Assembly: GCF_037042905.1 (NCBI RefSeq)
Contig: NC_087254.1
Coordinates: forward strand, 2,666,001-2,730,000
Length of the DNA stretch: 64,000 nucleotides
Origin: Lytechinus pictus
Lineage: Eukaryota
Direction of reading: 5' to 3'
Position numbers and translations under genes: made by a program. Below the pieces are notes generated by a model. That model searched no databases, was not told the DNA's origin, and worked only from the letters and a program-made list of their open reading frames with translations. Shown piece after piece: positions 20,891 to 61,959 of this stretch. Each line of letters opens with the position of its first letter. Positions within the stretch are counted from its first letter, which is position 1.

Positions 20891-20899
20891 TCACCACCT

Positions 20900-21188: not shown

Positions 21189-21199
21189 AAAGGAGGAAT

Positions 21200-21640
21200 A
21201 TCCGTTACCCTACCCGGTCGACTACCCTCCAGATTGATCACGTGTTCAAGACCCATCCCACTACCAAGGATCACTTTAAAAGTGTCTTTTCATTGGATAC
21301 CGCGTGTTCTACTGGAGACAAATACTGTTACGTTTTTGATAGCGATACGAGTGATAAACCAGGCTCCCATAGGCTCGCATTTTACTACGATGGAAGGTAG
21401 AGTTTTTTTTTTCTCTTTTGGAAATCAACCCTCGTTTCGACATAGAAGAATTTCTGCATGATTCAATCAAACACTGGGGGTGGGCAGTACTGTATCTACT
21501 ATCTGATTAAAAGATCACAAGGAAAGATATATTCTGAATGTCTTTGGGACTGATTTGAATGGAAATCATAACGAAGTAAACAGATGGTTTAATGGGAACT
21601 ATAACTCACAACATCCGATTCACTCTTTCACAGATCGCTA
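21200..21640 (+). pseudogene. Maverick/adenain-type cysteine protease remnant (remnant C)
   Basis: TLQIDHVF...FKSVFSLD...VFDSDTSDKPGSHRLAFY...FFFSFG...SNTGGGQYCIYYL..R; matches the NTD..PG.HW / FFDS.G / S..CG.YC pattern with the catalytic Cys lost. Confidence 0.75.
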
Positions 21641-23377: not shown

Positions 23378-25036
23378 CTGGTACCGGACAGATTTGATGG
23401 ACGCACACCTGTCGAAGATTATCTGCATCACTTTGAGGCCTGTGCTGGAGTAAACGGATGGACAAGAAGGGAAGCAGTTCAGTTCCTTGCTGCAAGTCTG
23501 AGGGGCCCTGCTGTGAAGTTGTTGACCCAACAACCTGGAGTGGTGTTGACATACGACGAGTTGGTATACAGGCTCAGAAACAGGTTTGGCCTAGGAGGCA
23601 AAGCTGAGGTATACCTGGCGGAGTTGAGGCAACGTCGTCGCCGACCAAAGGAAAGTCTCCAGGAGTTAGGACAAAGAATACGGGAGCTGTGTGGATTGGC
23701 GTATCCCGAATTCGACGAAAAGGGGCAGGATCGGCTTGCCCGAGGGCATTTCCTAGATGCCGTAGTAACACCAGAAATAAGAGAAGGATTATTCCGTGCT
23801 CAACCTCGCACATTGGATGATGCTGTGGAAGCTGCTTTAAACACAGAGGCCTTTCTGAGAATGGAGGGTCAGAGGAACGAAGTAAAGCGGGCTACAAGGT
23901 ACAGCCGAGCTCTGGAAGAGCAAGAGTGTGAGGTTGTAGCAGTGCGGGAACATCAACCAAGGAATCCAACTATCGACAAGATAGTAAAGGCTGTCATAGA
24001 CGCCTTGGATGAAAGAGACAGGACAAAGGAAACACAAATCAGGACCAAGTATCAGGAATCAAGAAAAGATGGCGTAGAGCCACAAAGAAAAAGAGAGGAA
24101 CCAAATAAATCAAAGATTGATGAACAAGAGGAACAAAGATGTTTCAACTGCAATGGATTGGGGCATTGGAGGAAAAACTGCCCATATCCAAAGAAAATGA
24201 AAGGAGGAACAGCAGCTTTTCAAGTATCCGAAAGGGAAATGATGAGCGAAATAAAAGAGAAAGAGGAACAAATCAGAGTCGGAACGACTCTAGATGGACA
24301 AGAGAAAAGAGGAACAGAGGAACAAACAACAGTCGGAGTGACTCTAGATGAACAAGAGAAAAGAGGAATAAAAGAACAAGAAAAAGAGGAACAAACCAGA
24401 GTCGGAGCGACTCTAGATATCAAGAGAAAAGGGCTTTACCTTCAAGGCAGAGTAAATGGACAAGAATTAAAATTATTGGTCGACACTGGAGCTACCAACA
24501 CTCTTATTGGAGAGAAAGTGTTTGACCAAATAGAGGAAATCAGAAGACCAGAATTACTACCAGTGACAAGTGTTGTACTACAAGCAGATGGATCTCAATT
24601 GAGAATCAGAAGAAAGTCAATGCTGGAAGTGCAGATTGGAGACATAGTCGTCACTACAATGGCTACAGTGGCTAGTCTAAAGAATGAGGGCATTTTAGGG
24701 CTAGATTTCCTAGTCAAAATCAATGCTGTATTAGACTGCCAAAAGATGGAATTGAGGACCAACTATGGCATAATTCCATGCCTAGATAGTAACGGAGAAT
24801 CATTCTGCAGGAGGATAGTAGCGGGAGAAGATTATTCGATTCCCCCAGGACACGAGGTGGTATTAGCAGGTAGAGTTACAGGCAGAAAAGTGTCACTAGG
24901 TGATGGATTAGTAGAACCACCTGCAAATCCAACAGAACTAATCAAGATGAAGCATGCACGTGTTCCATGGCTTCTAGACGTCTTGTTCGAATATACCCTG
25001 TGCTGCCAGACCGGGAATATAGGGAACCGCGAATGA
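23378..25036 (+). pseudogene. Gypsy B gag-protease open frame, truncated before RT
   Basis: LVPDRFDGRTPVEDYLHHFEAC..., CFNCNGLGHWRKNC knuckle, LLVDTGA aspartic protease. Confidence 0.88.

Positions 25037-29244: not shown

Positions 29245-29247
<3 letters not shown>
27945..29247 (+). repeat. 3' LTR of Gypsy B with internal short tandem repeats
   Basis: TG...CA ends, preceded by a purine-rich tract and followed by (TA)n. Confidence 0.7.
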
Positions 29248-29319
<72 letters not shown>

Positions 29320-29396
29320 GTGTGAAGTTATACATGTACTACAGCTTTGGCAACTCTTTTATATTTAAATATTGTGTGAAAGAAATGGATGAAGAG

Positions 29397-29480
<84 letters not shown>
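29248..29480. repeat. (TA)n microsatellites
   Basis: Two long TA runs. Confidence 0.97.
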
Positions 29481-31376: not shown

Positions 31377-31574
31377 TTTTTGAAATAATGTCGGTCGGTT
31401 GAGAAGTGCTCCTTTATTCCTTTGGGAGGTAACTATATTGAGTTTCCCCCCGGAAATATATTTGTCCTCAAGCGGAATTCATCTGGAGTGTCAGGTTTTA
31501 GGTCGAAGAAAAGGTAGCCGTATTTATCTTTGGTAGCATCTGCGTATGCCTCTGGAAAAATCTCGTTCGCCCTG

Positions 31575-31957
31575 ATGGGTGTTTTATAAAGCTGTTCGTA
31601 AGTTAAGAGCGACTTTAAGAACGACTGGTGATCCTTTCTTGTTATACCGAGGTTTTTTACCTGACTGCTAAGAAAGAACGAATGCCTGTGAGTAAGAGAC
31701 CAGGGGACCTACGGCTTAAGGTCCTCTCCGAGGGACCTGGTAATGAGGATAAATGCCTTACCAAAGGGCACTAGCGCACCACTTGGGAATCGAACCCGGG
31801 TCACCGGAATCCGAAACCCCCGCTCTACCGACTGAGCTATCGCGCCTCCCTTGTGGTAAATGGTATATTCATTGGCGACGGTTTAGCGCTTAAGAAAGGA
31901 TCACCAGTCGTTCTTAAAGTCGCTCTTATCTTACGAACAGCTTTATGAAGCACCCAC
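31575..31957. mobile_element. PIF/Harbinger-like MITE (CTG TSD) inserted in the ATPase
   Basis: Long TIRs; 3-bp TSD; removing it restores the ATPase frame. Confidence 0.85.
31643..31849 (-). mobile_element. tRNA-derived SINE nested in the MITE
   Basis: A box TAGCTCAGTCGG, B box GGTTCGATTCC, non-tRNA tail, CTTGT TSD. Confidence 0.85.
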
Positions 31958-32444
31958 CTGGATACATTTATTTGGCTAAACAGCTGATTTGCATTTTGTC
32001 CCGACAATTATTGAACAAACAACAATAATGGGTATTAAGGGAAATTGTCCTAGATTCCTTTCCTTCATGGAATAAATTCTGACTAATATAAATTACACTG
32101 ACGTTTCTATGATGACACCCCTTCGTAAACAACGCAGCAACTTTTTTACTATCCCCCGCAGCAGCCATCAGATCATCAATGATAAAGAGTGCCGGTTTTC
32201 CGGTTTTGGTAAATTCGTAAAAGTCCGTGGGTAAATTTTCGTGAAATTCGATGTTTGGGTTAGTATTCATCATAACGGAATATTTTTTTTTGAGATTCAC
32301 CATAAAATCATATTATTTTCTCCGGTGTTTTATCAAACATTAATTGGTATATGTTTCAACAACCTCTTTATGAATAGAGTTTTACCCGAAAAGGTCGGAC
32401 CAATCACACACATGGGGAAAGGATGTCTCAATCGAGCATCCATT

Positions 32445-32524
32445 CATGGACCTATCCACGGAGGATTATCTATTGTTACTGGGGTGCTGTGACAATATAA
32501 TAATCCTCCGTGGATAGGTCCATG
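32445..32524. mobile_element. 80-bp hairpin MITE with an 8-bp TSD (P-element- or hAT-like)
   Basis: 25-bp perfect TIR CATGGACCTATCCACGGAGGATTAT; TSD CATCCATT. Confidence 0.85.
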
Positions 32525-33269
32525 CATCCATTCTATGATAATCAAGTAAACAATTACAAATAATGTTAAAACATAAAAAACCTCAACACCGATACAGTCG
32601 TAAGTGAATGCAGCGTAACTTAATTTCAGGTAATAAGAGATGTGAGTACATGCTTGTTTCATAACTGTATATTACAATACAATGCGACTTAATAAAACTT
32701 TTTACATGACAATAGCAGAACGTTAAACTACGGTCACGTTCAGTCAATGGAAGACGAACTAATAAAACTCTCTTCAAGACTAGTCCAAGTTACATACGGC
32801 CATTGTATTGCATTTGGGCCACCAGGCCGCTCCCGAAGCAGCACTAAAAGACATAAAAAAAACTTACGATAACAATTACCAAAAGAATGGTAACTAACAA
32901 ATTCATACGAAAGGGCAATGGCTATATCCCCATCGTGAGCTGGGGAAAATAGCCATTCTGAAAGTCACGAAGAGTGTCTTTTCCTTCAAAGGTAATACCG
33001 GTCCTACCATCCAGACACTAGTTCCCAACCTGGGTTCAGGGAAGGTTAGCCCGTCCATGCAGCTGGTGCAGTCCCAAGTTGCATGGACTAAATTGGGAAC
33101 GTTGGAACCAGTGTTTGGGTACATTCAAAATAAAAAAAGATATAGAATTTACTATCGGGTAAATCTTTCTTCCGTTCTTTCGATTAATTTTTCTTTTTCT
33201 TATCTTTTTCCTCTTTCTTTTGCTTCTCCATTCGTTGTTGTTCTTCTGTTGGGACATAATATGGGCTCT

Positions 33270-34500
33270 CTTTAGAAACTTTTATGTAACAATCGTGAGT
33301 TAGACCATCTACATAGGCTTTACACGTTCGACAATATATTTGTGAGCAATCGTGTCTTTCCAAACGACCGTGACAACTATCTTCATAAAAAAAACACGCT
33401 CGCATTTTGTTATATTTTTCTTGTATTATAGGCTATAGAGTCTCTGAAAACGGTAATGCTATGCAGCTGAAAACAGAGCTCAGTCAGCAAAGTCCTATTG
33501 CATTTGGAACATACGCGAGAAGAGGAGCGCTTTGTTTGATCGTTACTGTCACACTTGTCCGAATAACAATCGGGCACTTTGCGCAGCAGGCATGATGACG
33601 AGGATCATTGAATATTTCTAAATATTTGTTACAATAATTCTTGGCACATAAAAATGCAGACATGTTTGGTTTTTTATTACATTATATAATAGTGCCAGAG
33701 GATCCTGCGTATATCTAACAATGTTTTTTTTTCTACCTCTGTAAATCACAAGTCTATAAACAGGGTGGAGTACTTCCTGAAATTTGGCATACTGGGACGA
33801 ATCATCTTCTCTTACTTCAACACCCGCTAGCTCATGAAGTTTCGGGGCTTTTTTTCGTAAACCCTCTGTGGGTTTTCGATCTGTCCCCGACCATAAACAA
33901 CAGTTATCATTGCCGTTTACAAAATGTCTGGCTATCACTATCGCATTGGCAAAGCATGTATTTCCTTCTTTGGGTCAGGGTACTGTGATGATTCAGCCTT
34001 TCCGAATCGATGCCTTGGCATCAGACAGCCTGTCCATTTTTTCGGAGGTAACCACCTTCGGAGTTAACTACATGTAAAACCTGATTGTAAAACCAGGTTT
34101 CGGTATAAATTATTGATTGCTGTTTAGCACGCGCTCTAAAGGAATCAAGAATCGTGCTGATGTCAAAAATGTCTCACCATCGCATACGGAAAACCTATGG
34201 GAATATTAAGATATTTAGAAACTAGAACTCGACGGACAAAGTCCCTCTCCGAAGTACCTCTTAAGAGAAAGTTTTTCGCTGATTGAGAGAGGCTTCAACA
34301 TATCGGAGAAGATCCTGAACCAAGGAACAATTTTGTAGATCCCTACAAAGTCGTACCATCTTTCCCAAATCCCAAACCTTTTGGAAATCCTAGAATGGAC
34401 GAATTTCCACCTTAACTCGTCTGAATCTTATCTGGACAGGAAGGGATGGGACGATCCCCATTTGTTTGATTGCACGAGACATTATTTTCACAGCCATTGT
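33270..34500 (-). pseudogene. N-terminal and zinc-finger part of Maverick protein-primed DNA polymerase B, degenerate
   Basis: D.VR.VL.SKYLNIPI..P, LERVLNSN, NTCFANAIVIA...LHELAGV...KFQEVL...Y.L.I, then a Cys/His cluster CSKCNR...C..LH...HDC...YCRTC...HDCY; no exonuclease or polymerase motifs follow. Confidence 0.7.
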
Positions 34501-35688
34501 TATCTTCCACATACATGGACGTTGCATTGTCGAGATTTCCCTTTGATTTTTTTTCTTTTTCAATTTACACGCATCCCACCCATTTGGATATTTTTATCAA
34601 CCCTTTGAATATCATCCCATACTTCGTCGTCCGACGGGCGACGGAAAATAGAATTTGACATGGGGTGGAGGTGAATCTCCCGATACTACTACCGGGGCCT
34701 TCATGATTGGAAGGGGCGGGGTATCCCAACCATCGTTGGGGGTACCCTGTTCTTTTACATCCACATTTACAAGGTTAGACTTTTCCGGTTGATTTTCTAC
34801 GATCTTTGAAGAGTTGGCGGCATATTGCCTAGTTTAGTTCTACTTAGACGATTTAATTTAGTTTTTCTTCCAGTCTTCGATTTTGACTTTCCTCTACCAT
34901 CCTCTAAAACATTATTTGAATTGTAATTAATTTCCTTCCTAGCCTGTTACATATTTATAGCAACCGTTTCCATTTCATCCCATCCTTCATCGTCAGATGA
35001 AAAATAGTAATTGACACGGGATGGAGGTGAATCTCCCGATACGTTAGTACTTCCAGGACCCCCATGATGAGAAGGGGCTGGTATATTCCAAACGTGCATG
35101 GTGGTACCCTGCTCGTAAATCTCCATATTCTGAACATTTGAATTTTTAGTTTCTTAGCGATCTTTGGTGAATCGACAACATGACGCCTACGCTTAGTATG
35201 ATTGGAATTACATTTACTTTTGGCAGCTGAATTTGAACTTTTAGATTTTGAAACGCACGCAGCGGTGCATTGTCGCTTTCGACCTTGCCTGGCTTATGAT
35301 TCGAAATTACAAAATCATCATCAGAAAAGGTAGAAAAGGGAGCATGAGCTTCGGAACGAACGGGGTTGGCCCTACTTTCAACATCTCTTACTACCCTATT
35401 AGAATTCGTTACGCTACGTTCACTTACCGTCGTTGTTGGCGCCGGTGTTTCATCTTGAGATGGATGTTGTGGTAAGCCTTGGACAATTTCTCGAACCCTA
35501 TCAACTGTCCCGTCGACTACAGGTTGGATTTGGAAAAGAAAAAAGTTGAAAAGATTCGTGAGTAAATTTTCGAGATTTTCTCGAAGTTTGCTGCTGCGTT
35601 GCGAAGATGGTGTGACCATGATTGTAAACTACAGCTACAGGTTTCAATGGTTTCAGTCACCCCAGTTCCAACCAGCTCGCAAGCTGGA

Positions 35689-35728
35689 GAATGAGTGACT
35701 AGACGGATCGATTCTGAAACATTTTATA
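35689..35728 (-). promoter_or_regulatory. TATA box plus initiator-like element upstream of the Maverick A gene cassette
   Basis: TATAAAA (35728-35722) with TCATTC 34 nt downstream; identical spacing at 46877/46911 in Maverick B. Confidence 0.45.
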
Positions 35729-36926
35729 CTTTTTTCATCTCCCTCCTCACCCATCACGTTAATAGTTATTCTTTTCTACAGAAACTAAGAATGGATGCCA
35801 CTTGGATCAGGCTATTTGATCTCTAAAGGTTGTTTTCCTCTCTCCTATCCTTAATTGACAATGTATTTGATCTCTTAACGTTGTTTTCCCCCTCCTCCCC
35901 GCTCACGTTGACAATTATTCTTTTGTGCAGAAACTAAGAATGGATGCCACTTGGATCATTTTTTTTATAAATCGATTGAGAAATCTTGATGTTTGGGCTT
36001 TCTGTGCACACTACTCTGAACGCCTTTTCTGGTAGGTAAAGTGTTCTTTGCCTTTTTCAAAGTATTCTCTGACATCCACGTACACCTGCTTACGAAATGT
36101 CTTTGCGACGAGGTATTTGGGTCTGTCCTCCTTCCAGCTGATTGGACATTTTTTTCCGAACCTTCGTCACCGTCGCTTCTTTCAGTTTCCCCACTCCACT
36201 TACAGGTTTCTACCCCGTCTCTACCAAATTGACGATGGTTGGATGGTTTCATCTTTAACTCCATCTATTCTTTCTGATTTTTGTTAGGCTGCATATCCAC
36301 GTACGGTAGTTCATCGGCTACATGCAGTGGATTCTCACTATATACAACATCCGACTCGTGGCTTCCGTATCTTCTGCTCCTCCCCCTCCTTTCCTTTCCG
36401 GGGGTGACGGTATAGATGTGTCGTAGATTAGATGCTGGTATAATACCCTGCCATGGTTCCGCTTCTCCCTCGATTGCTGCAGTCCCTCGCTTGGTACGAT
36501 ACGTTGCCTTGTTCATTTTCCCCCTCGTTTTACACCTTTCCTTTTTTTTTACTCCATACCTTTCGCATCTTCTCCCATGACTTGTCGACCCCGCCTTTCG
36601 CAATATTGTCGAAATCCTATGACGTCATCTGGGGCCACTACGTCATCGGTATGACAACATGTTCATGACGTCATGACCATAACGTCATCATATCTTTGAT
36701 TTTAATTTATTCAATTCAATTCAATTCAATTCATTTATTTTCTCTTTTTCAATCTTTTTACATTTACAATGATAGCTCAATATACATATTTACAAAATAT
36801 AACATTTAAATCATTTATATAATACAGTAATACTATGAAATCGAAAGAGAACGAGACCAACTAAAAAGCAGAGCTTGTAGGGTGAAGGCCCCCTTTTATA
36901 AGTACATTATTCATAATGTACGCTAA

Positions 36927-37461
36927 CCCAGGGAACTCCCGCCCGCGCAGCGGGCCGGAGCCCAGGAGCTTACCGTGTATTTGACCATACTCACGGGACT
37001 ACCGGCGGGACTAGCGTGATTTATGGTCTAAATATTTCTCCAAATGAATTGTGAAAACTGAAATTATGCACTTACCACGATTATATGGATGAAGGTCTAA
37101 CGAGTGGCAGTTTCCTGACAACGAGGCACAGACTGGAACTTCAAAAAACGAAAAGTTCTCTCCTTCTACACCAGTCTCGATCGGCCATTTTGTTACGATT
37201 CATAACAAAAATGGCCGATCGAGACGGGGGTATAAGGAGAGAACTTTTCGTTTTTTTGAAGTTCCAGTCTGTGCCTCGATGTCAGGGAACTGCCACTCGT
37301 TAGACCTTCATCCATATAATCGTGGTAAGTGCATAATTTCTGTTTTCACAATTCATTTGGAGAAATATTTAGACCATAAATCACGCTAGTCCCGTGAGTA
37401 TGGTCATATACACGGTAAGCCCCTGGGCTCCGGCCCGCTGCGCGGGCCGGAGCTCCCTGGG
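36927..37461. mobile_element. 535-bp foldback MITE, piggyBac-like
   Basis: Near-perfect palindrome over its whole length; CCC..GGG ends; ctaa/TTAA flanks. Confidence 0.85.
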
Positions 37462-37960
37462 TTAAATGTATGCATGATTATGACGTCATATCCATATCTA
37501 TATTTCATACACGTATGAATTTATATTCATCTTCATAAAACAATTAAAAAAGTTATGACGTTATAGACATCCCTATACTACTGGCGGAGAGCGTTCGCGA
37601 AAGCATTATTTGTATAATTTGGCCTCACCACGCAACTGAGCGTGAAGAGAAAAGCTGTATTTTGACCTATGAAAAATAATACATAACACCAATAAAACAG
37701 AAAAATATCAACTAATGATAAGACTCTGACTTTTAACTCGAATATATTGAAAAGTAAAAACACAAAACGTAGTTTCATTTGATTTCATAACATTATACAT
37801 CAAATAAACATTGTTGTGTAGGATATATAATACAGGTGAAAAATATATAGCCCAGTTATGTTTATAGACAGCTATCAACCTTAAACAAAACAAAAACAAA
37901 CTTGGCATAATGTTTTCATTTCAGTGGCGAGGGTCATTTTTTAACAGACCTGATGCGATC

Positions 37961-39067
37961 CTAAGGTTTTGCTGCCATGGTGCCACCCACGGTACTTATG
38001 TCGATGACACCTCTTCCAAGTGCATTATTTCTTTCAGAGTTTCGAGTGACCATGTCTTTCAGAGCCTCCTTAAATTCAGGGTACCTTACAGCGTAGATGA
38101 TAGGGTTTGCGCAGGAGTTATAGAATCCAAGAACGGTAAGCATTGAATGGAGATCACTGTTAAGGTAGGATTCAGGAACCCACCCGATGTTATAACCAAG
38201 GTAAGCAATCTGGTTCGGAGTCCAGCAGATAAAGTAGACTAGAATGACTATGATCATCATCTTCAGGATACGTTCTCTGGCCACAATGTGGAGTGATGGC
38301 ATTGGGTTTCTGTTGGAGAGATGGGTAGTCATTCCTTGAGCGTTGTTAGATTGTTGACTTAGCTTACGAGCAATTAGAATCTGTGTAATTAGCATGGCGA
38401 AACATGGCACAAAGAGACGCAGACACAACCAGTAATAAGCGATAATAAGTTTTGTGTAGCGGTTTAGATACTGTTCTTTGCACTTGTTGGTGAAGCCGTC
38501 TACCGAATGCACAAAGAAGGCGAAGAGTACAGATAAGACAGATAGAATCCAGATAAGACAGATTAAGTTCGAGATACGACGCCGGGTAATGAGGCGCTTG
38601 ACATGAAGAGGGTACACCACAGCAATGTACCTTTCAACAGATATAGATATTAGAAGATATGCTGAGGCCGTAATGGACGCCCAGAGGAGGCTTTGTGTGA
38701 TAACAAATCTGCAGTAGAGCTCACCTAACCAGGTTTTTGGAATGTACGTTGGCGAAGGATATGGTATGAGCATCACTGAAGTTAAAAAGTCTGCAACAGC
38801 AAGACCTCTGATCAAGGTATCTGTGGATCTGTTTTTCTTCCTGCGATAAAAAAGAACAACAATCACTAGGAGATTTCCTAACATGCCAAGGATTGCAGAG
38901 ATAAGTTGCAGGATAACTGACCATGACCAATCCATTGGACTCCAGGAAAAATTTACAAGGATTGTCGTATTTGCATCAAGTCCGACCTGCGTTTCATTCG
39001 ATAGTCCATTGACAATCGTGGAATCATATTGAGTACTTTCATCCATCATCGGTTTCGTCGTTTTCAT
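37961..39067 (-). CDS. Intronless class A (rhodopsin-type) GPCR, galanin/allatostatin-A-receptor-like orphan, copy 1
   Basis: 7 hydrophobic helices; GN, LAVAD, ERY, CWTP and NPIIY motifs; N-glycosylation sites; first ATG at 39067 (ORF track starts at a TTG, 39109). Confidence 0.93.
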   Translation of the reverse strand: MKTTKPMMDESTQYDSTIVNGLSNETQVGLDANTTILVNFSWSPMDWSWSVILQLISAILGMLGNLLVIVVLFYRRKKNRSTDTLIRGLAVADFLTSVMLIPYPSPTYIPKTWLGELYCRFVITQSLLWASITASAYLLISISVERYIAVVYPLHVKRLITRRRISNLICLIWILSVLSVLFAFFVHSVDGFTNKCKEQYLNRYTKLIIAYYWLCLRLFVPCFAMLITQILIARKLSQQSNNAQGMTTHLSNRNPMPSLHIVARERILKMMIIVILVYFICWTPNQIAYLGYNIGWVPESYLNSDLHSMLTVLGFYNSCANPIIYAVRYPEFKEALKDMVTRNSERNNALGRGVIDISTVGGTMAAKP

Positions 39068-39729
39068 GATCAGTTCTAGAAATGATGGACTGGTGATCTT
39101 AGTGGCCAATTGCTTGTCTGTTAGTATGAACTGTCCGTTTAAGTATTAGTATTACCACGTAGTACAATAATTACCCTTTTGATTTCATAGGCATTATCAT
39201 GGCTGATTCGGCAACAGTATCTTAACAGTGACAACAATATCAACAAGACGACGGAAGGGCTGAACACAGTTGTTCGACTGTGCTTTGTGCAAACTCTTTC
39301 TTCAACTCAGAGTAGACATACTATGAGAGTACGATATTTACTATCACTTGGAGATGAAATCTATGCACGTCAAAGTTGTTTTCCTAAATATTTTCCAAAT
39401 GGCATGCAGTTCGCCCCCATATTTATATAAACAGAAGTAACATGATAAATGAAAATATTTTTTATGATATCCAGACGTCGAAGTTATAATAAAAGCTCGA
39501 TATATCAGTGGACCAGTTTAATTAAAGAAAGAGCACTATATACGTTGACGCTGATCGATGATTGACTTCGGTTCATAATATTGATATCGTTCGAATCAGT
39601 AGTACCGGTAGTTTACATAGAATTAGCATTGACTTTGTGTACGTTTTGAGGGCTTGAATACAAGGCATATGAGGAATTATCTCTTAAACTTTTGATTTAT
39701 TTGCCCACCGGATTGTTAATAAATATTGT

Positions 39730-40825: not shown

Positions 40826-41078
40826 TTCAATCATTCATTCCGGCACACAATGTGTGCACATCCTCCACTCCCTGGGGAGTATTCCAGTCAGTCGACGGTG
40901 GGGCGCACACAGTACTGGACAAGCTGCAATGACTTTCACATCCTACCGGGTACCCATTTAGCACCTGGGTCGAGAGTGGCAAAGTGTGGATTAACGCCTT
41001 GCCAAAGGACGCCAGACCGTGGTGGAATTCGAACACACGACCCTCTGTTTACAAGGCTAAAGTCAGAATCACTATACC
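40826..41078 (-). mobile_element. tRNA-derived SINE
   Basis: GGTATAGTG.. A box, GTTCGAATTCC B box, CCCAGGTGCTAAATGGGTACC core, (GAAT)n tail. Confidence 0.8.
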
Positions 41079-41769
41079 TCGGCTTATCCTATGTGTTTCA
41101 TTCCCAAGGATGATGGTACCACTGTGCATTCCACAATCAAGCTTATCAAGTCTGGTTTTGAAGGAGTTTACAGATGGAGCAGAGACAACTTCATTAGGTA
41201 GTGAGTTGCAGGCATGAACTACTCTAGCTCCAAAGTCAGTTGTTCTAACATTCAATCTGCCTCTTTTCTGGAAGAGTTTGAAAGGGTGACCTCGAATTGC
41301 CTCAACAGTAAAAGATGAGAAGAACATATCCCTTTCAAGCCAGTTTATTCCATGCACTATTTTAAAGTCTCGATCATGTCACCTCTTCTCATTCTGTATT
41401 GGAGGGATGGTAGTTTTAGAGCTCGAAGCCTGTCTCCATAGTCTAGCATTGCCAAGGATGGTATGAATTTTGTTGCTTTTCTTTGTACCTTCTCAATCTC
41501 CTTCATGTCATCCTTGTATCTTGGGTGCCTTCCTGTATTCAAGGATTGGCCGTACTGGTTTTGGGTTTTGGAATTGTATCCCTATACCTGGTGAGGAAGG
41601 TTCTCTCGAGTACTCGGCTAGCTTTCAAGACAGCTGAAGCAACATGCGTGTGAAATTTCAGTTCAGAATCCATTATAATTTCCAGGTCTCTTTCTTCCGA
41701 CACTTCCTCAAGAGTGGTTCCATCAAGGCTGTAGTTGTAATGCAAACAATTTCTGCCAATGTACAAGAA

Positions 41770-41883
41770 CAGTGGCGGACCGTGACCCGGAGGAGACAAA
41801 TCATTGGAGGGGCGCATCATTGTTCACAAACAATACAGTGCCCCTCCAATAAATTGTCTCATCTGGGTCACGGTCCGCCACTG
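41770..41883. mobile_element. 114-bp hAT-like MITE
   Basis: TIR CAGTGGCGGACCGTGACCC; near-perfect 8-bp TSD tacaagaa/tacaaaaa. Confidence 0.85.
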
Positions 41884-44145
41884 TACAAAAACTTACATGT
41901 TCCTATGTTGAACTGAAGCTGCCATTTCTTAGACCATTTTATGAGTATATCTAAATCAGCTTGCAGGATTTCACAATAAGTATTTGTAACTTTTTCTCTG
42001 AGGATCTTGGTATCATCTGCATATATCCGTACAATGCTCCTCATTATTTCTGGCAGGTCATTGATGAATATCACAAATACTGTTGGACCGAGGACACTGC
42101 CTTGCGGTATTCAACTCTTTTACTCACTCCACCTTGAAAACTGACTATCGATAGCAACTCTCTGTCTACGTCCTGTCAGGGAAGCATGTAACCACTGCTA
42201 AAGATTGCAAGTTATTCCATATCCTTTGAGTTTGCTTAATAGACGCTCATGGGGTACAAAATCGGAAGCTTACGAAAGTCAAGGTATATTGTGTCAATGT
42301 CATGTCCACTGTCTAAGGATGATGCCCAGAGCTCCATAACTTCCAATAACTGGGTTACACATGATCTACCAGGGAGCAGGGAGGAACCCATACGGGGCAT
42401 GACATGAAGCCTCGGATTATAGATTCCAGAATCTTGCCGATAACAGACGTGAGACTGATCGGGCGATAATTTTCAACAGCATTGCACAGGAGTGATGTTT
42501 GCATCTTTCCAAGATTATGGGAGTGCTCCTTCTTTTACAGATTTCCTGAATATGATAGTCATGGGTACATATCGTGTCAGAACTGGAGGTGATGTCAATG
42601 TCAGAAAGAGTGATACCATTATGTCGTTCCTTTAGATCAGGGACATAGTTGATAACTTGATAGTTGATAGTTGTAACACCCTGCACATTCTTTAACACTC
42701 CCAAGCTTCTACGAGACTGATGTAAAATATTTCTTTAAACATCTCTCTCAAAGTCTTGTCTTATTTTCTGAGCATTTTCCTTAGTTTCTTTGCTTCAGCC
42801 CTAAACCTTTCAAAATTTCTCCTAGAACGATTTTTCCTGTATGATCTCCATGCCCTATACTTTAGTTTGTGCTGCCTCATTGCAGTTCTAGTCATCCTAA
42901 TCTTGTTCTTTCTTCTCATTTTAGAGTCAGCCTTAGAGATGTTTATGTCTATCTCAGTCTCAAATTCGGATGAGAAGAGGTCCCATGCTTGATGGACATC
43001 CAAGTTTTAAAGATTTTCCACCCTGTTTACATCCAGAATAGCTATGTTTATTGCTGCATAGTGTCCTCTGTGCTACCTATTATATCTATATCCAGTTTGC
43101 TTTTTGGTTGAGATGTTGGGATATAGGTCTACATTAAACAGCAAGCACACATGGTCACTTAATCCTAGATTTGGGAAATATCATATTACTGATCATTTCC
43201 TCCTTGTGATCAGTAGATCAAGGATGGTAGGATATGCTGCCCATCCCTAGTCTGAGTGCTCTCTGTGATATGCTGATGTAAAAACATTATATTCGACAGT
43301 CAATACATATCTTTTCATCTGATGTACGAGACTCCCATATAGGTTCCAACAAATGGTAGGGCAGTTGAAATCTCCTACGACAAGCAAGTGTGATGGGTTA
43401 CTGCTTACAACCTCATGGAAAAGTTGGCATAATTTATCAGTATTGGAGTTTGCTTTCCTCAAAGTGGGGCTACGATATATAGTACCAACTGTCAGTGTGT
43501 CATTGTTCTTAATATACGCATACCTATCCATATACTCTCCTCAAAATCAGTTTCAAAATGGACTTAACAGTGGATGCATCCCTTTTTGTACATATACCAC
43601 TACGCCTCGTACTCCCTTTTTCTCGATGTTTGTGTAGGTTATATAGCTATCTATTTTGTAGTTTTCCTCGATTGGTTTTACATTAAAGTTTTTTGGCATC
43701 TGGTTGTTAACTAACAGATAGTAAAGCTAACTCATCCAGCTTGTTGAGTAAGCTGTCACTGTTTGTATACAAGACTCTCATCCCATCATTATTTATGTTT
43801 CTAAAGTAAACTTTGTCTCCAGTCTTGCATCTATCAGCTTCATGTTCTTCATCTGATATAGAAGACGAATATTCTGTGTCATTACCTGATTCACAGATGG
43901 AAATTTCAGATTAAAAACAAGTAGAAGCATTATCAGTCAAAGAAATGTTCTCTTCCTGGGCATGAACCAACCCTGTATTAATTGGCATGCTCAATTTGAG
44001 TCCCATTTTCAAAGTCCAATGTTCATGTATGTCTCCCTCTATTTATTTACATTGGACATGCATAATATGCATGTCCAATTGGTGGTGCCTGATGTCAGAT
44101 GTTTGATGGAGTCTCTGCATGGCTTGGGCTACTTTTAGTTGAAGT

Positions 44146-44259: not shown

Positions 44260-45185
44260 GTTGAAGTACCAAGTAAAGAATTATCTCCTTTCTTTTTACT
44301 ACTATCGTCAAGGTCAGTGCTCCTTGTATTTTCATAATATGTGGCAACATCTACTTGTATATCTTTAGTTGATGTCTGGCTATCTGAACAGATAGGACAT
44401 GGGTGTAAGAAGACTATGCAAAGAGCTGTTGTCCCCATGATTGTCTTGAATGATCGAATTAGCCTGCTTCCCAACAGGACTATTATCTTCAAAACTGTCC
44501 CCAGTCTTTGGTTCTGGGACACAAGGCTTCCGATTCTCTGGGTTGTCTCTGTGATATGTGCTATCAGGAATTTTTTTTATTCCTGAGGCATTAGAAGCAG
44601 TTATTACAATGGATTTAGAAGGAGCTAGAACATAGTGATAGAGATGTTTTGGTGTTTCTAAGTGGTACTTCGTCGTGGCACAATCTTATCATGTTTGATT
44701 ACTAGGTTTTGCTCACCGTTCTCTCTTCCTTTCTTTACTTCCGCTCAGTTCCTTGTGTTGAAGCCCTAGCTGAGCAGTTCTATCTGGGTCAACATATGAG
44801 TTTACCCATACAGACTGAATGAACGAATCTATTAGACCAATTGTACACAGTCTCCCTCTCTCTCTTGAGCTCTTTCGAATAAAAGACTATGTACTTACGA
44901 ACTCTCTATTTGCATAGGCCTACCTCTTTTGTGTAGTTTAGGTTGTGTACAGACTGAATGAACGAATCGATTAGTTTTGTACAGACCGTACGAATCTATT
45001 ATACCCATTGTTTACCATCTCACTCTCCACCCCTTATCTCTGAACGAATCCATTACCTTTTACTCTAAAACGACTCCATTAAATTTTACTCTCACTGAAT
45101 GAACGAATCTATTAATATCATTTCATCTCAAATCGAATCTACTCTTGGAAAAATTTGATATATTACTACCATCCTCAATCGATCC

Positions 45186-45487
45186 TTCTGACATTGACAT
45201 CACCTCCAGTTCTGACACGATATGTACCCATGACTATCATATTCAGGAAATCTGTAAAAGAAGGAGCACTCCCATAATCTTGGAAAGATGCAAACATCAC
45301 TCCTGTGCAATGCTGTTGAAAATTATCGCCCGATCAGTCTCACGTCTGTTATCAGCAAGATTCTGGAATCTATAATCCGAGGCTTCATGTCATGCCCCGT
45401 ATGGGTTCCTCCCTGCTCCCTGGTAGATCATGTGTAACCCAGTTATTGGAAGTTATGGAGCTCTGGGCATCATCCTTAGACAGTGGA
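45186..45487 (+). repeat. Inverted 302-bp copy of LINE segment 42305-42606
   Basis: Reverse-complement match with one mismatch seen; identical peptides appear in the ORF track. Confidence 0.95.
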
Positions 45488-46273
45488 ATCTACTATTTAA
45501 CGAATTTAATGTATTACTACCATCCTAAATGAAATCATTTCTGTCAATAGGATAACCGGTCATTAAACTACATATATAAAAAAATTAAATCTCATTTATT
45601 AATACCAACGAATTTGACATGTACACCTAACTATTAAATCGAATCATTTCATTTATCAACTCTTAATCGAAATTAGCACTACAAAGGATTTTTACGCGTA
45701 CATCTCACTAAACGAATCCTTTCATTTATCGACTTTTATAAATTTGCCCATTCTACAGTAATTGCTGCTTATTTTTTAATCTTACTGGACAATATGCCTC
45801 CCGCATTGGGTAAAATAATGCCCCAAATTGGTTGGACACATAATTTCCCTCTCGCTGGTAACAATTTTACCCAATATTTTCTACAGTGTACAAATGAGGG
45901 ATAATAAAAATGAAAATAACGAGAGACTAAAAAAAACGAGGACATAGGATGATAATCATGAAGAAAGATGTGATGGTGTATTTATGGGAGAGACGATAGG
46001 TAAAAAAAAGTCAAGGAAAAAATGCACTACACTGAGAAACAAATTTCAATGCTTGAGAAAAGAAGTGAAAGAACCATTGAAAGATCAATATCGAAATTAG
46101 AGTATACACAGAGAGAAATGATATTTATCAAAAGAAAATTACATGTCTAGAAAGAGAGAAACGATTATATGTTGAATCTGATGAGAAGAATAGTGATCAC
46201 GCTTGATGACTGTAGCAACGGTTGGAACAGTACACATAAAAGTGTCAGTCGTATCTAATTAATTCTCATTCTA

Positions 46274-46870
46274 ATGATGGACACAAGATTGAAAACTCCC
46301 TTCACTCTCTTAATAGGTGGACCAACCGGATCAGGCAAACCAACATTTGTTAAGACACTCTTGAAAAAAAAAAAGATGTTGTGGACCATATCTTTGACCA
46401 CGCTGTCTGGTGTTATGGGGAATATCAAGATGGTTATGTTGATATGGAGAGGGATGTGCCTGACATACAAATTCATGTAGGAATACCTTCCAATCTTGAA
46501 CCGATGTTTGACCGTAAAGAGAATAATCTGATCATCCTTGATGATTTAATGACTGAAGCCATTAAAGATAAGATAATCACACATTTGGTCACAAAGGGTA
46601 TAGTCATCATAGAAATATTTCCGTCATACTTCAAAATGTATTTTTTCAAGGAAAGGAAAGTCGTACAAAAAGTTTGTACACTCACTACAAAGAGATATAC
46701 CCAAATAAAGTTAAATTCTTCCAAGAGGCATATGGTGATGCCACTTCCAAACCAAATGGATGCCTTCTAATAGATCTGAAACCTGATACACATGATCGTC
46801 TACGGCTAGGAACGGAAATTTTGCCAGGGGAATGACAATATGTCTATAGTATGAAACAACACATTCTCAT
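46274..46870 (+). pseudogene. Packaging ATPase of Maverick B, frameshifted
   Basis: MDTRLKTPFTLLIGGPTGSGK, WCYG..Q, LIILDDLM, TKG.HHRN, EAYGDAT..P.G.LLIDLKP. Confidence 0.9.
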
Positions 46871-46959: not shown

Positions 46960-47310
46960 ATGTCACAGAATTTGAAGAATAATGTACCATATCTTCATGC
47001 CTTGGCTCGTGGAAACAATATTCAGAGACAAGGACAATTAAAGGGTGCTAACACAGATTCGGTCAAATGTATTTGTGAATATGCTCTCAAAATACTGAGG
47101 GGTAATATACCTCTCTCTACAGAGGAACTTTCTACAACGAAGAACTTCGAGAGGGTTGTGACACCTCGAGACGATGTGTACAGAATCGAACGCGTACTAG
47201 GAAAGAGAAAACGTGGGAAATTGATAGAATATCTTGTGAAGTGGCAAGGTAACCCAGATAAATTCAACAGTTACGTCACCGAAATACAAAGGATTGATTG
47301 GCAAGCTTAA
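46960..47310 (+). pseudogene. Deletion fusion of the small basic Maverick ORF N-terminus with the integrase C-terminal chromodomain
   Basis: ...CICEYALKILRGNIPLS joined to YRIERVLGKRKRG...EYLVKWQG.PDKFNSYV. Confidence 0.82.
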
Positions 47311-58721: not shown

Positions 58722-59288
58722 TATGAATCCAATTATTATCATTATTTATCTTTTTAAATAATTTACAATTAACTTCGTTTTATCAACATGATTGTATATG
58801 CAATAATTCTGTTATCATTCGCCACACACCTATTTAAACTTCTTTTAATATTAAGACACAAGTTTGTATTTTATCTCAATAGATGTAGAGACTTCCGCTA
58901 CTGTTTATTCTCGAACGTAGAAATTAAGGCGGAGAGCGGTCGCGAAAGTATTACTTGTATAATTTGGTCTCACAATGCCAACTGACCGTGAACAGAAGTG
59001 CTGTATTTTGGCCTATGAAACATAACGAATAACACAGAAACATATCCAATAATGGTAAGAGGCCGACTTATAATACGAATATGTTGAAAGGTATAAACAC
59101 AAAACTAAGATAGCTCTATCTGATTTCATAATATTTCAAATAAATTAAATATTGTTGTTAAGGATATATAATATAGGTGAAAAATATATAGCCCAGTTAT
59201 GTTTATAGATGGCTATCACCCTATAAAAAAAGCGGCATGTTTTCATTTCAGTGGCGAGGCTCATATTTTTAACAGACCTGATGCGATC

Positions 59289-60392
59289 CTAGGGTTTTGA
59301 CGCCATTTTGGTGCCACAAATTGTTCTTATCTCTATGACACCTCTTCCAAGTGCATTATTTCTTTCAGAGTTTCGAGTGACCATGTCTTTCAGAGCCTCC
59401 TTGAATTCAGGGTACCTTACTGCATAGATGATCGGGTTTGCGCAGGAGTTATAGAATCCAAGAACTGTAAGCATTGAATGGAGATCACTGTTAATGTAGG
59501 ATTCAGGAACCCAACCGATATTATAACCAAGGTAAGCAATCTGGTTCGGAATCCAGCAGATAAAGTAGATTAGAATGACTATGATCATCATCTTCAGGAT
59601 ACGTTCTCTGGCCACAATGTGGAATGATGGCATTGGGTTTCTGTTGGAGAGATGGGTAGTCATTCCCTGAGCGTTGTTAGATTGTTGACTTAGCTTGCGA
59701 GCAATTAGAACCTGTGTGATTAGCATGGCGAAACATGGCACAACGATACGCAGACAGAACCAGTAATAAGCTATAATAAGTTTTGTGTAGCGGTTTAGAT
59801 ACTGTTCTTTGCACTTGTTGGTGAAGCCGTCAACCGAATGCACAAAGAAGACGAAGAGTACAGATAAGACAGACAGGATCCAGATAAGACAGATTAAGTT
59901 CGAGATACGACGCCGAGTGATGAGGCGCTTGAAATGAAGAGGGTATACCACAGCAATGTACCTTTCAACAGATATAGATATCAGGAGATATGCCGAGGCT
60001 GTAATGGACGCCCAGAGAAGGCTTTGTGTGATAACAAATCTGCAGTAGAGCTCACCTAACCAGGTGTTTGGAATGTACGTTGGCGAAGGGTTTGGTATGA
60101 GCATCACTGAAGTTAAGCAGTCTGCAACAGCAAGACCACTGATCAAGGAATCTGTTGATCTGTTCCTCTTCCTGCGATGAAAAAGAACAACAATCACTAG
60201 AATATTTCCTACAATGCCAAGGATTGCAGAGATAAGCTGCAGGATAACAGACCATGACCATTCCATTGGACTCCAAGAAAAACTTGCAAGGATTGACGAA
60301 TTTTCATCAAGTCCATCCTGCGTTTCATTTGATAGTCCATTGACAATCATGGAATCATATAGAGTACTTTCATCCATCATCAATTGCGTCAT
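59289..60392 (-). CDS. Intronless class A GPCR, copy 2 (~90% aa identity to copy 1)
   Basis: Same 7TM motifs (ERY, CWIP, NPIIY); intact frame; first ATG at 60392. Confidence 0.93.
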   Translation of the reverse strand: MTQLMMDESTLYDSMIVNGLSNETQDGLDENSSILASFSWSPMEWSWSVILQLISAILGIVGNILVIVVLFHRRKRNRSTDSLISGLAVADCLTSVMLIPNPSPTYIPNTWLGELYCRFVITQSLLWASITASAYLLISISVERYIAVVYPLHFKRLITRRRISNLICLIWILSVLSVLFVFFVHSVDGFTNKCKEQYLNRYTKLIIAYYWFCLRIVVPCFAMLITQVLIARKLSQQSNNAQGMTTHLSNRNPMPSFHIVARERILKMMIIVILIYFICWIPNQIAYLGYNIGWVPESYINSDLHSMLTVLGFYNSCANPIIYAVRYPEFKEALKDMVTRNSERNNALGRGVIEIRTICGTKMASKP

Positions 60393-61959
60393 TTTAATGA
60401 TCAATTTTGGAAATGATCGACGGTGCTCTTACTGGCCGATTACTTGTCAGGTAGTCTGAACCGTCTGTTTTAAGTATTAGTATTTTCAAGTAGTACAATT
60501 AGCCTTTTGATTTCATGGGGATTACCATGGCTGATTCGGCAACAGCAATATAAGCAACACGATAGAAGGGCAGAACCCATTAGTTCGATTGTGCTTTGTG
60601 GAAACTCTCTTTTCAACTCAGAGATTCCACAGATAGACTTTCAGAGTACGATGTTTTTTAACACTTGGAGATAACAATCTATGCACGTCAAAGATACTGT
60701 TCTACGTAATATTTCAAAATGACATGCAGTTCGCCCCCAAATATAAGCAGAAGTAACATGATAAATGAAAATAATTTTGTATGATATCCAGACGTCGCAG
60801 TTATATAATGAAAGCTCGGTATATCAGTTGATCAACTTAATTAAAGAAAGAGCACTATACGTTGACGTTGATCGATGATTGACTTCGGTTAATGATATTG
60901 ATTCCATTCAAACCACGCACGATCTTGATCTTTTTTTTTAAAGAAGAAGGCCACTTAATTTTTTTTATCATATGTGTACTGATGGTGGTTCGTGTCACCA
61001 TCATCAAACAATCATTGTATTTTTACTGGAAAATAAATTCGACGTCAATCAAAACGTGTGGGTAGACAAAGTCCTTCATACAGGAAAGTTCGATATAGTG
61101 AAAAAAAATAGAAATGTGAATTGGGTACAACATGAGTTCGAGGCAAATTCAATCAAAGAAATCCATGCAAGATGATACTCAGAAATGTGCTCAAAATACA
61201 GGGAAGCGGGTACTATAGTGTAAGCAAAAACTTTTACAATGGCAAATTGGGGAGATGAGTAACAGTTGGAACACAAGGAAACATTGACACGGTGACGGTG
61301 AGGCAAAGCCCCCTTCAAGAACCCCAACAAGGTTGCAGGATAAACAATGTTCCACAAATCTAAATCGACATTCAACCGAATTGCACATAAAGACCTAAAA
61401 TTTCATCCCAACAAATATAGAAAAATGCAGAATATTTTAAAATGAGATCATGGATAAAAAAAAATGTTTTGATTCATTTCCTTGTAGTAAAGGTTTTTAG
61501 GTTTAGTGTATATATATATATATATATTTATTTTTTTGTATACATTTCTTAAATCTTCATTTTTTTTTAAGTATGGGCCCCCAAGTTGTGGGTCAAAAAT
61601 CTATAAAAAAAAAGAAATAAATGAAATAAGAGTGAATGAAGACGTAATTTGAAAACGCGCTTTATTCAACGTAATGGAGAGGATTTCTGACGAGTGGTAA
61701 AAGAAGACATATTTCTGTGTTCAATGGACCATATTGCATAAAAATATGAGCCAGTTGTACAAAACACATGCCAGTTTACGATTCTAAAATTATGTACAAT
61801 AGAATCTAGTAATTTTTTTCACATTATACTCATTTAAAGTGCCATTAAAATTTTTGTGGGACACGCTGTACGCTGTTTACACGCGATGGAAATACAATTG
61901 CATTTTACACCGTATGGTTCAATTTTGATTTCAAGTGCAATTGGTTCAATTAGTTTGCG

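What the first reader, a model, noticed from the sequence alone, without database searches (positions are those of the whole stretch)
37577..39603. An intact GPCR gene block bounded precisely by the termini of two different, divergently oriented Mavericks
Seen: the block 37583-39597 (GPCR copy 1 plus flanks) is homologous to ~58928-60914 (copy 2). On the left, homology begins at ggcggagagc, immediately after ACTACT (37577-37582). On the right, it stops at ..ttcgaatc, immediately before AGTAGT (39598-39603). Maverick genes lie behind both hexamers and read away from the GPCR. The two inward sequences differ (AGTAGTATAGGG vs AGTAGTACCGGT), so they are two families. Established: Mavericks/Polintons end in short (AG/AGT)n termini and make 5-6 bp TSDs. 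Inference, two options: two endogenous viruses integrated within about 0.5 kb on either side of one receptor gene without disrupting it (an insertion hotspot), or Maverick ends took part in duplicating or relocating the receptor. The second would be a virus-linked route for GPCR family expansion.
Basis: partly seen in the sequence, partly recalled or inferred. Interest (0 to 1): 0.85.

Follow-up and report, generated by a model that had tools for sequence, protein, structure and literature searches.

The report
Receptor gene bracketed by two Maverick relics
An intact sea-urchin receptor gene sits exactly between the ends of two decayed virus-like Maverick elements, and its similarity to a neighbouring duplicate stops at those ends; most likely the two elements simply inserted beside one copy after an ordinary local duplication.

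Summary
Window 37583-39597 matches 58928-60915 at 87%, and similarity becomes random at the first base beyond ACTACT (37577-82) and AGTAGT (39598-603). Both blocks hold intact, intronless rhodopsin-type GPCR genes under purifying selection. The genome is a Lytechinus sea urchin. L. variegatus has both junctions base for base, so the arrangement predates that species split.

Behind each hexamer lies a broken A32-type packaging ATPase gene that reads away from the receptor. An intact 19.3-kb relative from an ENA assembly has AGTAGTG-type inverted ends, a 6-bp target duplication, the same polymerase-ATPase-integrase order and the same polarity. (AGT)2 is a published Maverick end motif. The terminus calls and the "two families" call are therefore well supported. 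No other Lytechinus copy could be fetched.

The test that would separate the two readings failed both ways. No far ends, target duplications or resumed host homology were found in 64 kb here or 35 kb of L. variegatus. Gene conversion is confined to the coding region and does not explain the sharp edges. Four other paralogue loci carry no Maverick relics.

Best reading (about 0.55): two independent integrase-made insertions whose far ends were later lost. Duplication linked to the Maverick ends remains possible (about 0.2).

The parts
37583..39597 (.). Copy-1 block: receptor gene with 378 bp downstream and 530 bp upstream non-coding DNA. This is the whole stretch homologous to copy 2.
   Evidence: 87% identity, sharp edges. 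(93% identical to the L. variegatus orthologue).
37961..39067 (-). Intact intronless rhodopsin-type GPCR gene, copy 1 (longest ATG reading frame, 368 aa, stop included).
   Evidence: Omega is 0.19 against the L. variegatus orthologue.
37577..37582 (-). End motif of element A (AGTAGT on the minus strand), abutting the block.
   Evidence: (AGT)2 motif in PMC8097293. The same motif sits at the proven ends of the relative in L005.
31436..37582 (-). Relic of Maverick-type element A. It keeps the terminal region and the ATPase gene; the polymerase and everything beyond the ATPase are missing. It holds nested younger insertions.
   Evidence: Colinear with L. variegatus from 31517 to 37582. ATPase similarity. 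No polymerase similarity. No inverted partner for the end.
31436..32443 (-). Broken A32/FtsK-type packaging ATPase gene of element A. It has at least 2 frameshifts, 2 in-frame stops and 1 nested insertion.
   Evidence: Pfam Pox_A32 E 1e-4 on the longest piece. 4124 relatives in the representative library, the best at about 50-55% identity. Lesion counts.
36924..37464 (.). 541-bp near-perfect palindrome (foldback element) nested in element A, 118 bp from its end. It is absent from L. variegatus.
37583..37588 (.). GGCGGA: the six host bases next to the end of A. This is the predicted half of a target-site duplication; no partner was found.
39592..39597 (.). CGAATC: the six host bases next to the end of B. 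This is the predicted half of a target-site duplication; no partner was found.
39598..39603 (+). End motif of element B (AGTAGT), abutting the block.
   Evidence: PMC8097293.
39598..47310 (+). Relic of Maverick-type element B. It keeps a terminal region with sub-terminal repeats, nested retroelement pieces, the ATPase gene and a chromodomain piece. The polymerase, integrase core and far end are missing.
41049..43531 (-). Pieces of a non-LTR retrotransposon (reverse transcriptase, endonuclease) nested in element B. At least part of the stretch aligns in L. variegatus.
46259..46832 (+). Broken A32/FtsK-type packaging ATPase gene of element B. It has at least 2 frameshifts and 1 in-frame stop.
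46960..47310 (+). ORF with a chromodomain (domain 47155-47283). It matches the C-terminal chromodomain of the integrase of the intact relative. The integrase core is missing (one large deletion).
   Evidence: Pfam Chromo E 2e-7. tblastn with the L004 integrase.
58928..60915 (.). Copy-2 block, with unrelated flanks and no end motifs.
   Evidence: The orthologous copy, with the same left flank, is in L. variegatus.
59289..60392 (-). Intact intronless GPCR gene, copy 2 (367 aa, stop included).

Best explanation
A local duplication somewhat larger than 2 kb produced two copies of an intronless receptor gene in the Lytechinus lineage. It happened roughly 1.6 times as long ago as the L. pictus / L. 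variegatus split. Afterwards, but still before that split, two different (AGT)2-type Maverick/Polinton elements integrated by their own integrase. One landed 378 bp downstream of copy 1 and the other 530 bp upstream. Both had the polymerase-ATPase end towards the gene. Similarity to copy 2 stops at the first host base outside each element because that is where foreign DNA begins. Both elements then decayed. They lost the polymerase, most other genes, the far inverted repeat, the far target-site duplication and the adjoining host flank, so homology never resumes.

Shown: the breakpoints, the end motifs, the ATPase relics, their polarity, the age of the junctions, and the absence of far ends.

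Inferred: the order of events, the original size of the duplication, and the loss of the far flanks.
For: 1. True ends.
- The AGTAGT motif sits exactly at both breakpoints. (AGT)2 ends with 6-bp TSDs are documented for Mavericks (PMC8097293).
- An intact relative spans L005 1928-21205 (19,278 bp). It starts and ends with AGTAGTGTGG as inverted repeats and has the TSD CTTACT.
- Three copies of that relative become homologous exactly at that base.
- Its gene order is B-type polymerase, ATPase, then rve+Chromo integrase. Its ATPase reads inwards 8.1 kb from the end. Relics A and B have the same polarity, at 5.1 and 6.7 kb.

2. Integrase-type joins. Both relic ends begin in the same register (AGTAGT...) as the relative that carries a proper TSD.

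3. Age.
- Both junctions are identical in L. variegatus.
- Non-coding identity is 88-92% between orthologues and about 85% between paralogues.

4. Order of events. Most stops and frameshifts in the two ATPase relics are specific to one species and few are shared. The elements are therefore not much older than the species split, which fits insertion after the duplication.

5. Loss of ends is common. Most vertebrate Mavericks lack discernible inverted repeats (PMC8097293). This region also turns over fast, with several kb of lineage-specific insertions since the split.

6. No family-wide link. There are no Maverick relics within 10 kb of four other receptor loci.
Against: - No homology to the flanks of copy 2 resumes anywhere in the window or in 35 kb of L. 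variegatus. On the right side, the whole ancestral interval up to copy 2 was examined.
- No far end or target-site duplication was found. The duplicated DNA that can be detected is therefore exactly the DNA between the two ends.
- This reading needs two rare insertions from different families, head to head and 2 kb apart, within a fairly short interval. It also needs the loss of both far flanks.
- The terminus calls could not be checked against other copies of the same two families in Lytechinus.
- The lesion-based dating rests on very few events.
Confidence: 0.55

Rival explanations
1. End-linked duplication. Elements A and B were already in place. The 2,015 bp between their inward-facing ends was then copied to a site about 12 kb away (the ancestral distance), so the element ends themselves set both breakpoints. 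One possible route is cleavage or fork stalling at the ends followed by repair.
For: - Detectable paralogous DNA equals the inter-terminus DNA to the base on both sides.
- There is no far-side homology or TSD.
- Paralogue identity is flat up to both edges.
- Both insertions and the duplication fall in roughly the same period.
Against: - No known Maverick activity cuts out or copies DNA outside the element. This is my own knowledge of the proposed protein-primed replication and retroviral-type integration; PMC2836005 notes that the excision mechanism is unknown.
- The two ends share only 7 nt.
- Copy 2 carries no end-motif bases, no TSD and only 1 bp of possible microhomology.
- Few ATPase lesions are shared between the species, which argues that the elements are not older than the duplication.
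- Four of four other receptor loci lack Maverick relics.
Confidence: 0.2
2. One complex repair event. A chromosome break was mended by joining pieces of two extrachromosomal Maverick genomes to a copy of the nearby receptor locus. Copy 1 would then be the new copy and arrived together with both truncated elements.
For: - One event would explain the missing far ends and TSDs, the truncation of both elements, and a duplicate limited to the block.
- The events are of roughly similar age.
Against: - Both element ends are complete to the last base and in the integrase register. End-joining of protein-capped linear genomes would be expected to nibble them (my own knowledge).
- It needs two different element families present at once.
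- The captured piece happens to be a complete gene that has been kept under selection.
Confidence: 0.08
3. The two genes are old paralogues. The 2-kb similarity is a gene-conversion tract that could not spread past the insertion points.
For: Conversion between the copies is real. In the coding centre (38036-38728), 16 sites group by species against 1 that groups by orthology, and the two L. variegatus copies are 99.5% identical there.
Against: - The non-coding parts of the block show the orthologue pattern (55 sites). Paralogue identity there is a flat 78-91% right up to both edges, with no decline toward the ends.
- Conversion tracts need flanking homology and should leave a gradient.
Confidence: 0.05
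4. Copy 2 is a retrocopy of the copy-1 transcript.
For: The gene has no intron, and the block is about the size of a transcript.
Against: - There is no poly(A) tract or TSD at copy 2.
- The transcript ends would have to coincide with both element ends to the base.
Confidence: 0.02

Closest known systems
Maverick/Polinton elements with (AGT)2 end motif and 6-bp TSD (Kapitonov and Jurka 2006, as cited in PMC8097293; vertebrate survey PMC8097293)
   Same: The AGTAGT end motif. An A32/FtsK-type packaging ATPase that lies after the polymerase position and reads inwards. A chromodomain as in the integrase C-terminus. Decay to relics without recognisable inverted repeats is the common fate.
   Different: A and B have no second end, TSD, polymerase, integrase core, protease or capsid genes left. 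The host is a sea urchin. The two belong to different families (ATPase pieces 29-59% identical, no DNA similarity).
Intact 19.3-kb element in ENA assembly ERZ24900295 (loci L004, L005, L006)
   Same: Its ATPase is about 50% identical to relic A and 31-43% to relic B. It has AGTAGT-type ends, the same polarity of end and ATPase, and ATPase followed by a chromodomain integrase, as in B.
   Different: It is complete: inverted repeats longer than 1.1 kb, TSD CTTACT, a 1217-aa B-type polymerase, rve+Chromo integrase, a C48-like protease (weak match) and a BIR-domain gene. Its host is unknown. It has no DNA similarity to A or B.
Cargo capture by nematode Mavericks (bioRxiv 10.1101/2022.07.12.499685)
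   Same: A host-type gene physically associated with Maverick ends.
   Different: In nematodes the cargo lies inside the element, between the left inverted repeat and the integrase, and moves with it. Here the gene lies outside both elements, facing their ends.
Alternative (reversed-ends) transposition of cut-and-paste elements such as maize Ac/Ds (my own knowledge, not checked here)
   Same: Two element ends facing each other across host DNA can cause rearrangements and duplications. This is the nearest mechanistic analogue for the rival reading.
   Different: It requires a cut-and-paste transposase, and the segment between the ends is usually lost rather than copied. Mavericks carry a retroviral-type integrase, and no such activity is known for them.
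Lineage-specific expansions of intronless rhodopsin-type GPCRs in sea urchins ('surreal-GPCRs'; the term appears in PMC5442662 and PMC7042368)
   Same: An intronless 7tm_1 gene, with many paralogues in Lytechinus, Strongylocentrotus and Diadema and local clustering.
   Different: Membership of a named surreal-GPCR subgroup was not tested. Automatic names such as QRFP-like or opioid-like are not functional evidence.

Membership tests
Maverick/Polinton (elements A and B) | Conserved end motif (AG)3 or (AGT)2 at the element end | tested here: met
   AGTAGT lies at both breakpoints and is conserved in L. variegatus. The motif is documented in PMC8097293. It is also found at the proven ends of a relative.
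Maverick/Polinton (elements A and B) | Terminal inverted repeats (a second end) | tested here: not met
   Neither terminal kilobase has an inverted partner in the window or in 35 kb of L. variegatus. This is as expected for truncated relics.
Maverick/Polinton (elements A and B) | 6-bp target-site duplication | tested here: not met
   GGCGGA and CGAATC are not found next to an end motif elsewhere, even with up to 3 mismatches, beyond chance.
Maverick/Polinton (elements A and B) | Protein-primed B-type DNA polymerase gene | tested here: not met
   tblastn with the 1217-aa polymerase of the intact relative gave no match in either relic or in L. variegatus.
Maverick/Polinton (elements A and B) | Retroviral-type integrase | tested here: inconclusive
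   B keeps only a chromodomain piece that matches the integrase C-terminus. A has nothing.
Maverick/Polinton (elements A and B) | A32/FtsK-type packaging ATPase | tested here: met
   Broken genes lie on both sides. Pfam Pox_A32 gives weak matches. All 150 listed relatives match the A and B relics of the window and the A relic of L. variegatus; 147 match the B relic of L. variegatus. Similarity to the ATPase of the intact element is about 50% (A) and 37-43% (B).
Maverick/Polinton (elements A and B) | Cysteine protease and capsid genes | tested here: not met
   No tblastn match with the other gene products of the intact relative. Sensitivity is limited to that one relative.
Maverick/Polinton (elements A and B) | Other copies of the same family in the same genome that begin at the same base | not testable with these tools
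   No sea-urchin genome collection can be searched by DNA. Protein searches returned no named Lytechinus relative. Pattern scans of the viral and metagenome collections gave nothing or chance hits.
Rhodopsin-type GPCR (Pfam 7tm_1) | Full-length 7tm_1 domain in an uninterrupted reading frame | tested here: met
   Profile positions 1-260 of 260 are covered in both copies. All four genes of the two species are intact, with omega 0.19-0.32 in comparisons not affected by recent conversion.
Processed retrocopy (for copy 2) | Poly(A) tract and flanking target duplication | tested here: not met
Maverick cargo gene | The gene lies inside the element, between its inverted repeats | tested here: not met
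   Both end motifs point at the gene from outside, ACTACT on the left and AGTAGT on the right. This is the reverse of an element's own ends.

The most novel reading that the evidence does not exclude
The ends of two resident Maverick elements fixed both breakpoints of a host gene duplication. The DNA between two inward-facing viral ends would have been copied as a unit to a nearby site, giving a virus-end-linked way of making new receptor genes.
Probability: 0.2. Interest if true: 0.8.

Novelty: new member of a known kind. Interest (0 to 1): 0.35.

Why it matters
If the ordinary reading holds, the locus is a clean, dated example of two endogenous virus-like elements settling within about 0.5 kb of a working gene without harming it. 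The arrangement has been kept in two sea-urchin species. It also shows how insertions can mimic precise duplication breakpoints. It adds (AGT)2-type Maverick relics to Lytechinus and points to an intact relative with the same end type. If the rival reading held, Maverick ends would be a new cause of host gene duplication, which would bear on how large receptor families expand. A small sample of four other loci shows no such association.

Tried and rejected
- Gene conversion as the cause of the sharp edges. Rejected: conversion is confined to the coding centre, and paralogue identity is flat up to both edges.
- Retrocopy origin of copy 2. Rejected: no poly(A) tract and no TSD.
- The block as a mobile cassette shared by paralogues. 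Rejected: other paralogues share only coding sequence.
- The receptor as cargo inside one element. Rejected by the orientation of the end motifs.
- Integration into a circular copy of the block. Rejected: the first and last six bases of the block differ, and the block is colinear with copy 2 rather than permuted.
- An inverted duplication creating A and B. Rejected: no DNA similarity, and the ATPases are only 29-59% identical.
- Dating from S. purpuratus. This led nowhere: its closest gene is equally similar to both copies, is not syntenic and has no relics nearby.
- Searching for other copies of A and B.
  - Protein searches gave only short unnamed contigs, the best at 68% identity on a 737-bp contig.
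  - Terminus patterns gave nothing in viral contigs. In metagenomes the A pattern found nothing and the B pattern gave three chance matches inside GC-rich contigs, which look bacterial, with no further similarity.
- Pfam and PDB sequence searches gave no hits for the 1217-aa protein of the relative.
  - I then found two short B-family polymerase motif patterns in the expected order.
  - Those patterns came from my memory, so this is a lead and not a membership test.
Full report
OBSERVATION

A self-comparison of the window gives one long alignment, 37583-39598 against 58928-60915, with 87.0% identity over 2039 columns. I aligned the two blocks globally with 50 extra bases on each side. Identity is about 85% in the non-coding parts and 93% in the coding part. 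It falls to 24% directly left of 37583 and to chance level right of 39597. ACTACT occupies 37577-37582 and AGTAGT occupies 39598-39603. Each hexamer occurs 13 times in 64 kb, so finding both at two fixed positions by chance has a probability of about 4e-8. Both blocks hold uninterrupted 7tm_1 reading frames on the minus strand.

ORGANISM AND ORTHOLOGUES

The best named relative of copy 1 is a receptor of Lytechinus variegatus, at 93% identity. The window's own copy-2 protein shares a 90% cluster with a protein named from L. pictus. The window is therefore most likely L. pictus.

I fetched two overlapping L. variegatus loci, L001 and L002. They form a contiguous 35 kb that is colinear with window 31517-61782.

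- Both junctions are present base for base...CCCTATACTACT followed by the block, and the block followed by AGTAGTAC....
- L. variegatus also has copy 2 with the same left flank.

The whole arrangement, that is two copies and both junctions, therefore predates the split of these two species. No empty site is available.

WHAT LIES BEHIND THE HEXAMERS

On each side there is one recognisable virus-type gene, a broken A32/FtsK-type packaging ATPase.

- On the left it spans 31436-32443 on the minus strand. On the right it spans 46259-46832 on the plus strand. Both read away from the receptor.
- The longest piece of the left gene has 4124 relatives in the representative library, with the best about 50-55% identical.
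- The left gene carries at least 2 frameshifts, 2 in-frame stops and 1 nested insertion. The right gene carries at least 2 frameshifts and 1 stop.
- The right element also keeps a chromodomain piece just after the ATPase (46960-47310).
- The right element holds nested pieces of a non-LTR retrotransposon (41049-43531).
- Nothing resembling a polymerase, integrase core, protease or capsid gene was found.
- The two elements share no DNA similarity beyond AGTAGTA, and their ATPase pieces are 29-59% identical.

ARE THE HEXAMERS TRUE ENDS?

Other Lytechinus copies of these families could not be fetched with the tools available. Three indirect lines support the terminus calls.

1. (AGT)2 with 6-bp TSDs is a documented Maverick end type (PMC8097293).

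2. A relative of the left ATPase (P0130, about 50% identity) sits in an intact element present in three contigs of ENA assembly ERZ24900295 (L004-L006).
   - The three copies become homologous exactly at AGTAGTGTGG.
   - In L005 the element spans 1928-21205 (19,278 bp), ends with the inverted copy of that sequence, and is flanked by the 6-bp duplication CTTACT.
   - It encodes a 1217-aa protein, the ATPase, an rve+Chromo integrase and a weakly C48-like protease. The 1217-aa protein carries two B-family polymerase motif patterns in the expected order (the patterns came from my memory, so this is only a lead).

3. In that element the ATPase lies 8.1 kb from the left end and reads inwards. The two relics have the same polarity, at 5.1 and 6.7 kb. 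The ATPase followed by a chromodomain, as in relic B, matches its order of ATPase followed by integrase.

I therefore accept 37582 and 39598 as true element ends, joined to host DNA in the register of integrase-made insertions.

THE DISCRIMINATING TEST

I searched the flanks of copy 2 from both species against the whole window and the 35 kb of L. variegatus, and found nothing.

- Neither terminal kilobase has an inverted partner.
- GGCGGA or CGAATC next to an end motif does not occur beyond chance.
- On the right, the whole ancestral interval between element B and copy 2 was covered. It is 12 kb in L. variegatus; the extra DNA in the window is three lineage-specific insertions.

The detectable duplication is therefore exactly the DNA between the two ends. 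This negative is weaker than it looks. Both far ends are missing, and any deletion that removed them must also have removed adjoining host DNA.

GENE CONVERSION

I made a four-way alignment of the block, using two copies from each of two species.

- 55 sites support the orthologue grouping, nearly all in the non-coding parts.
- In the coding centre (38036-38728), 16 sites group by species against 1 that groups by orthology.
- The two L. variegatus copies are 99.5% identical in that centre.

Conversion between the copies is therefore real but confined to coding sequence. Paralogue identity in the non-coding parts is a flat 78-91% up to both edges. Conversion limits therefore do not explain the sharp edges.

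TIMING

From the identities, I calculate Jukes-Cantor distances in the non-coding parts of about 0.08-0.13 for orthologues and 0.15-0.20 for paralogues. The duplication is therefore about 1.6 times as old as the species split (inference).

Most stops and frameshifts in the two ATPase relics are specific to one species, and few are shared. If lesions accumulate with time, the elements became inert not long before the split. That fits insertion after the duplication, but the counts are small and the result is weak.

All four receptor genes are intact, with omega 0.19-0.32 in comparisons not affected by recent conversion.

WIDER ASSOCIATION

I examined four other receptor loci: S. purpuratus P0003, L. 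pictus P0005, and L. variegatus P0065 and P0031, each with 10 kb on either side. They show no similarity to the ATPase family or to the other proteins of the intact element. They share only coding sequence with the block. This small sample gives no sign of a family-wide link between these receptors and Maverick ends.

VERDICT

- The best-supported reading (about 0.55) is two independent integrase-made insertions of two different (AGT)2-type Mavericks beside copy 1. They happened after a local duplication, and the far ends and adjoining host flanks were later lost.
- An end-linked duplication (about 0.2) is not excluded, because the detectable duplicate equals the inter-terminus DNA to the base. 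It lacks any known mechanism and is not favoured by the lesion counts.
- A single complex repair event (about 0.08), conversion limits (about 0.05) and retroposition (about 0.02) are less likely.
- In nematodes, Maverick cargo lies inside the element (bioRxiv 10.1101/2022.07.12.499685). Here the gene lies outside both elements.

- Scripts, the first notebook entry, and the reference to one search printed the bounds of matching pieces of the two broken ATPase genes. Such bounds border on places of breaks. After noticing, I printed counts and outer bounds only.
- In one search I used short polymerase motif patterns from memory. In my reasoning I also recalled motif-like fragments of other proteins. 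None of these serves as evidence here.

Noticed in passing
window 38036-38728, and the same stretch in L001/L002: Gene conversion between the two receptor copies after the species split. Sites group by species in the coding centre, and the two L. variegatus copies are 99.5% identical there, with within-species dS of 0.05 against about 0.15 elsewhere.
   Followed up: yes
window 36924-37464: A 541-bp near-perfect palindrome (91% self-complementary) lies 118 bp inside element A and is absent from L. variegatus. It is probably a young foldback element.
   Followed up: partly
window 42305-42609 and 45183-45487: A 305-bp inverted repeat at 99.3% identity lies inside element B, close to retroelement pieces. 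It is much younger than its surroundings and its origin is unexplained.
   Followed up: no
window 50075-53511, 53988-56907, 57688-58716: Three insertions between the two receptor copies are absent from L. variegatus.
- A 3.4-kb element bounded by 141-bp direct repeats (96.5% identical), with reverse-transcriptase and protease-like ORFs and an internal 207-bp tandem duplication.
- A non-LTR retrotransposon.
- A 1-kb foldback element with about 360-bp arms.
   Followed up: partly
window 37473-37582: The last 110 bases of element A are 93.5% identical between the species, as conserved as the gene's 3' flank. They contain two TGACGT-type palindromic motifs. This might reflect constraint or merely local rate variation.
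   Followed up: no
L005 16183-16674 (also in L004 and L006): The intact 19.3-kb Maverick relative carries a gene with a BIR domain (PF00653), the domain found in inhibitor-of-apoptosis proteins, as an accessory gene on the opposite strand.
   Followed up: no
window 23513-25036 and 16000-20100: LTR-retrotransposon remains. They include an uninterrupted 507-aa gag-protease ORF (zinc knuckle, aspartyl protease) and, on the other strand, gag, protease and integrase C-terminal pieces.
   Followed up: no
window 9048-9317, minus strand: A short ORF that reminded me of the N-terminus of folliculin. Pfam found nothing, so this rests on memory only.
   Followed up: partly
L008, L009, L010: A 21-nt pattern from the end of element B matches three GC-rich metagenome contigs, which look bacterial. 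The match lies inside what looks like a coding region and there is no further similarity. These are chance hits.
   Followed up: yes
window 29245-29480: Long (TA)n-type microsatellite blocks. A similar tract occurs to the right of copy 2 (about 61509-61546).
   Followed up: no
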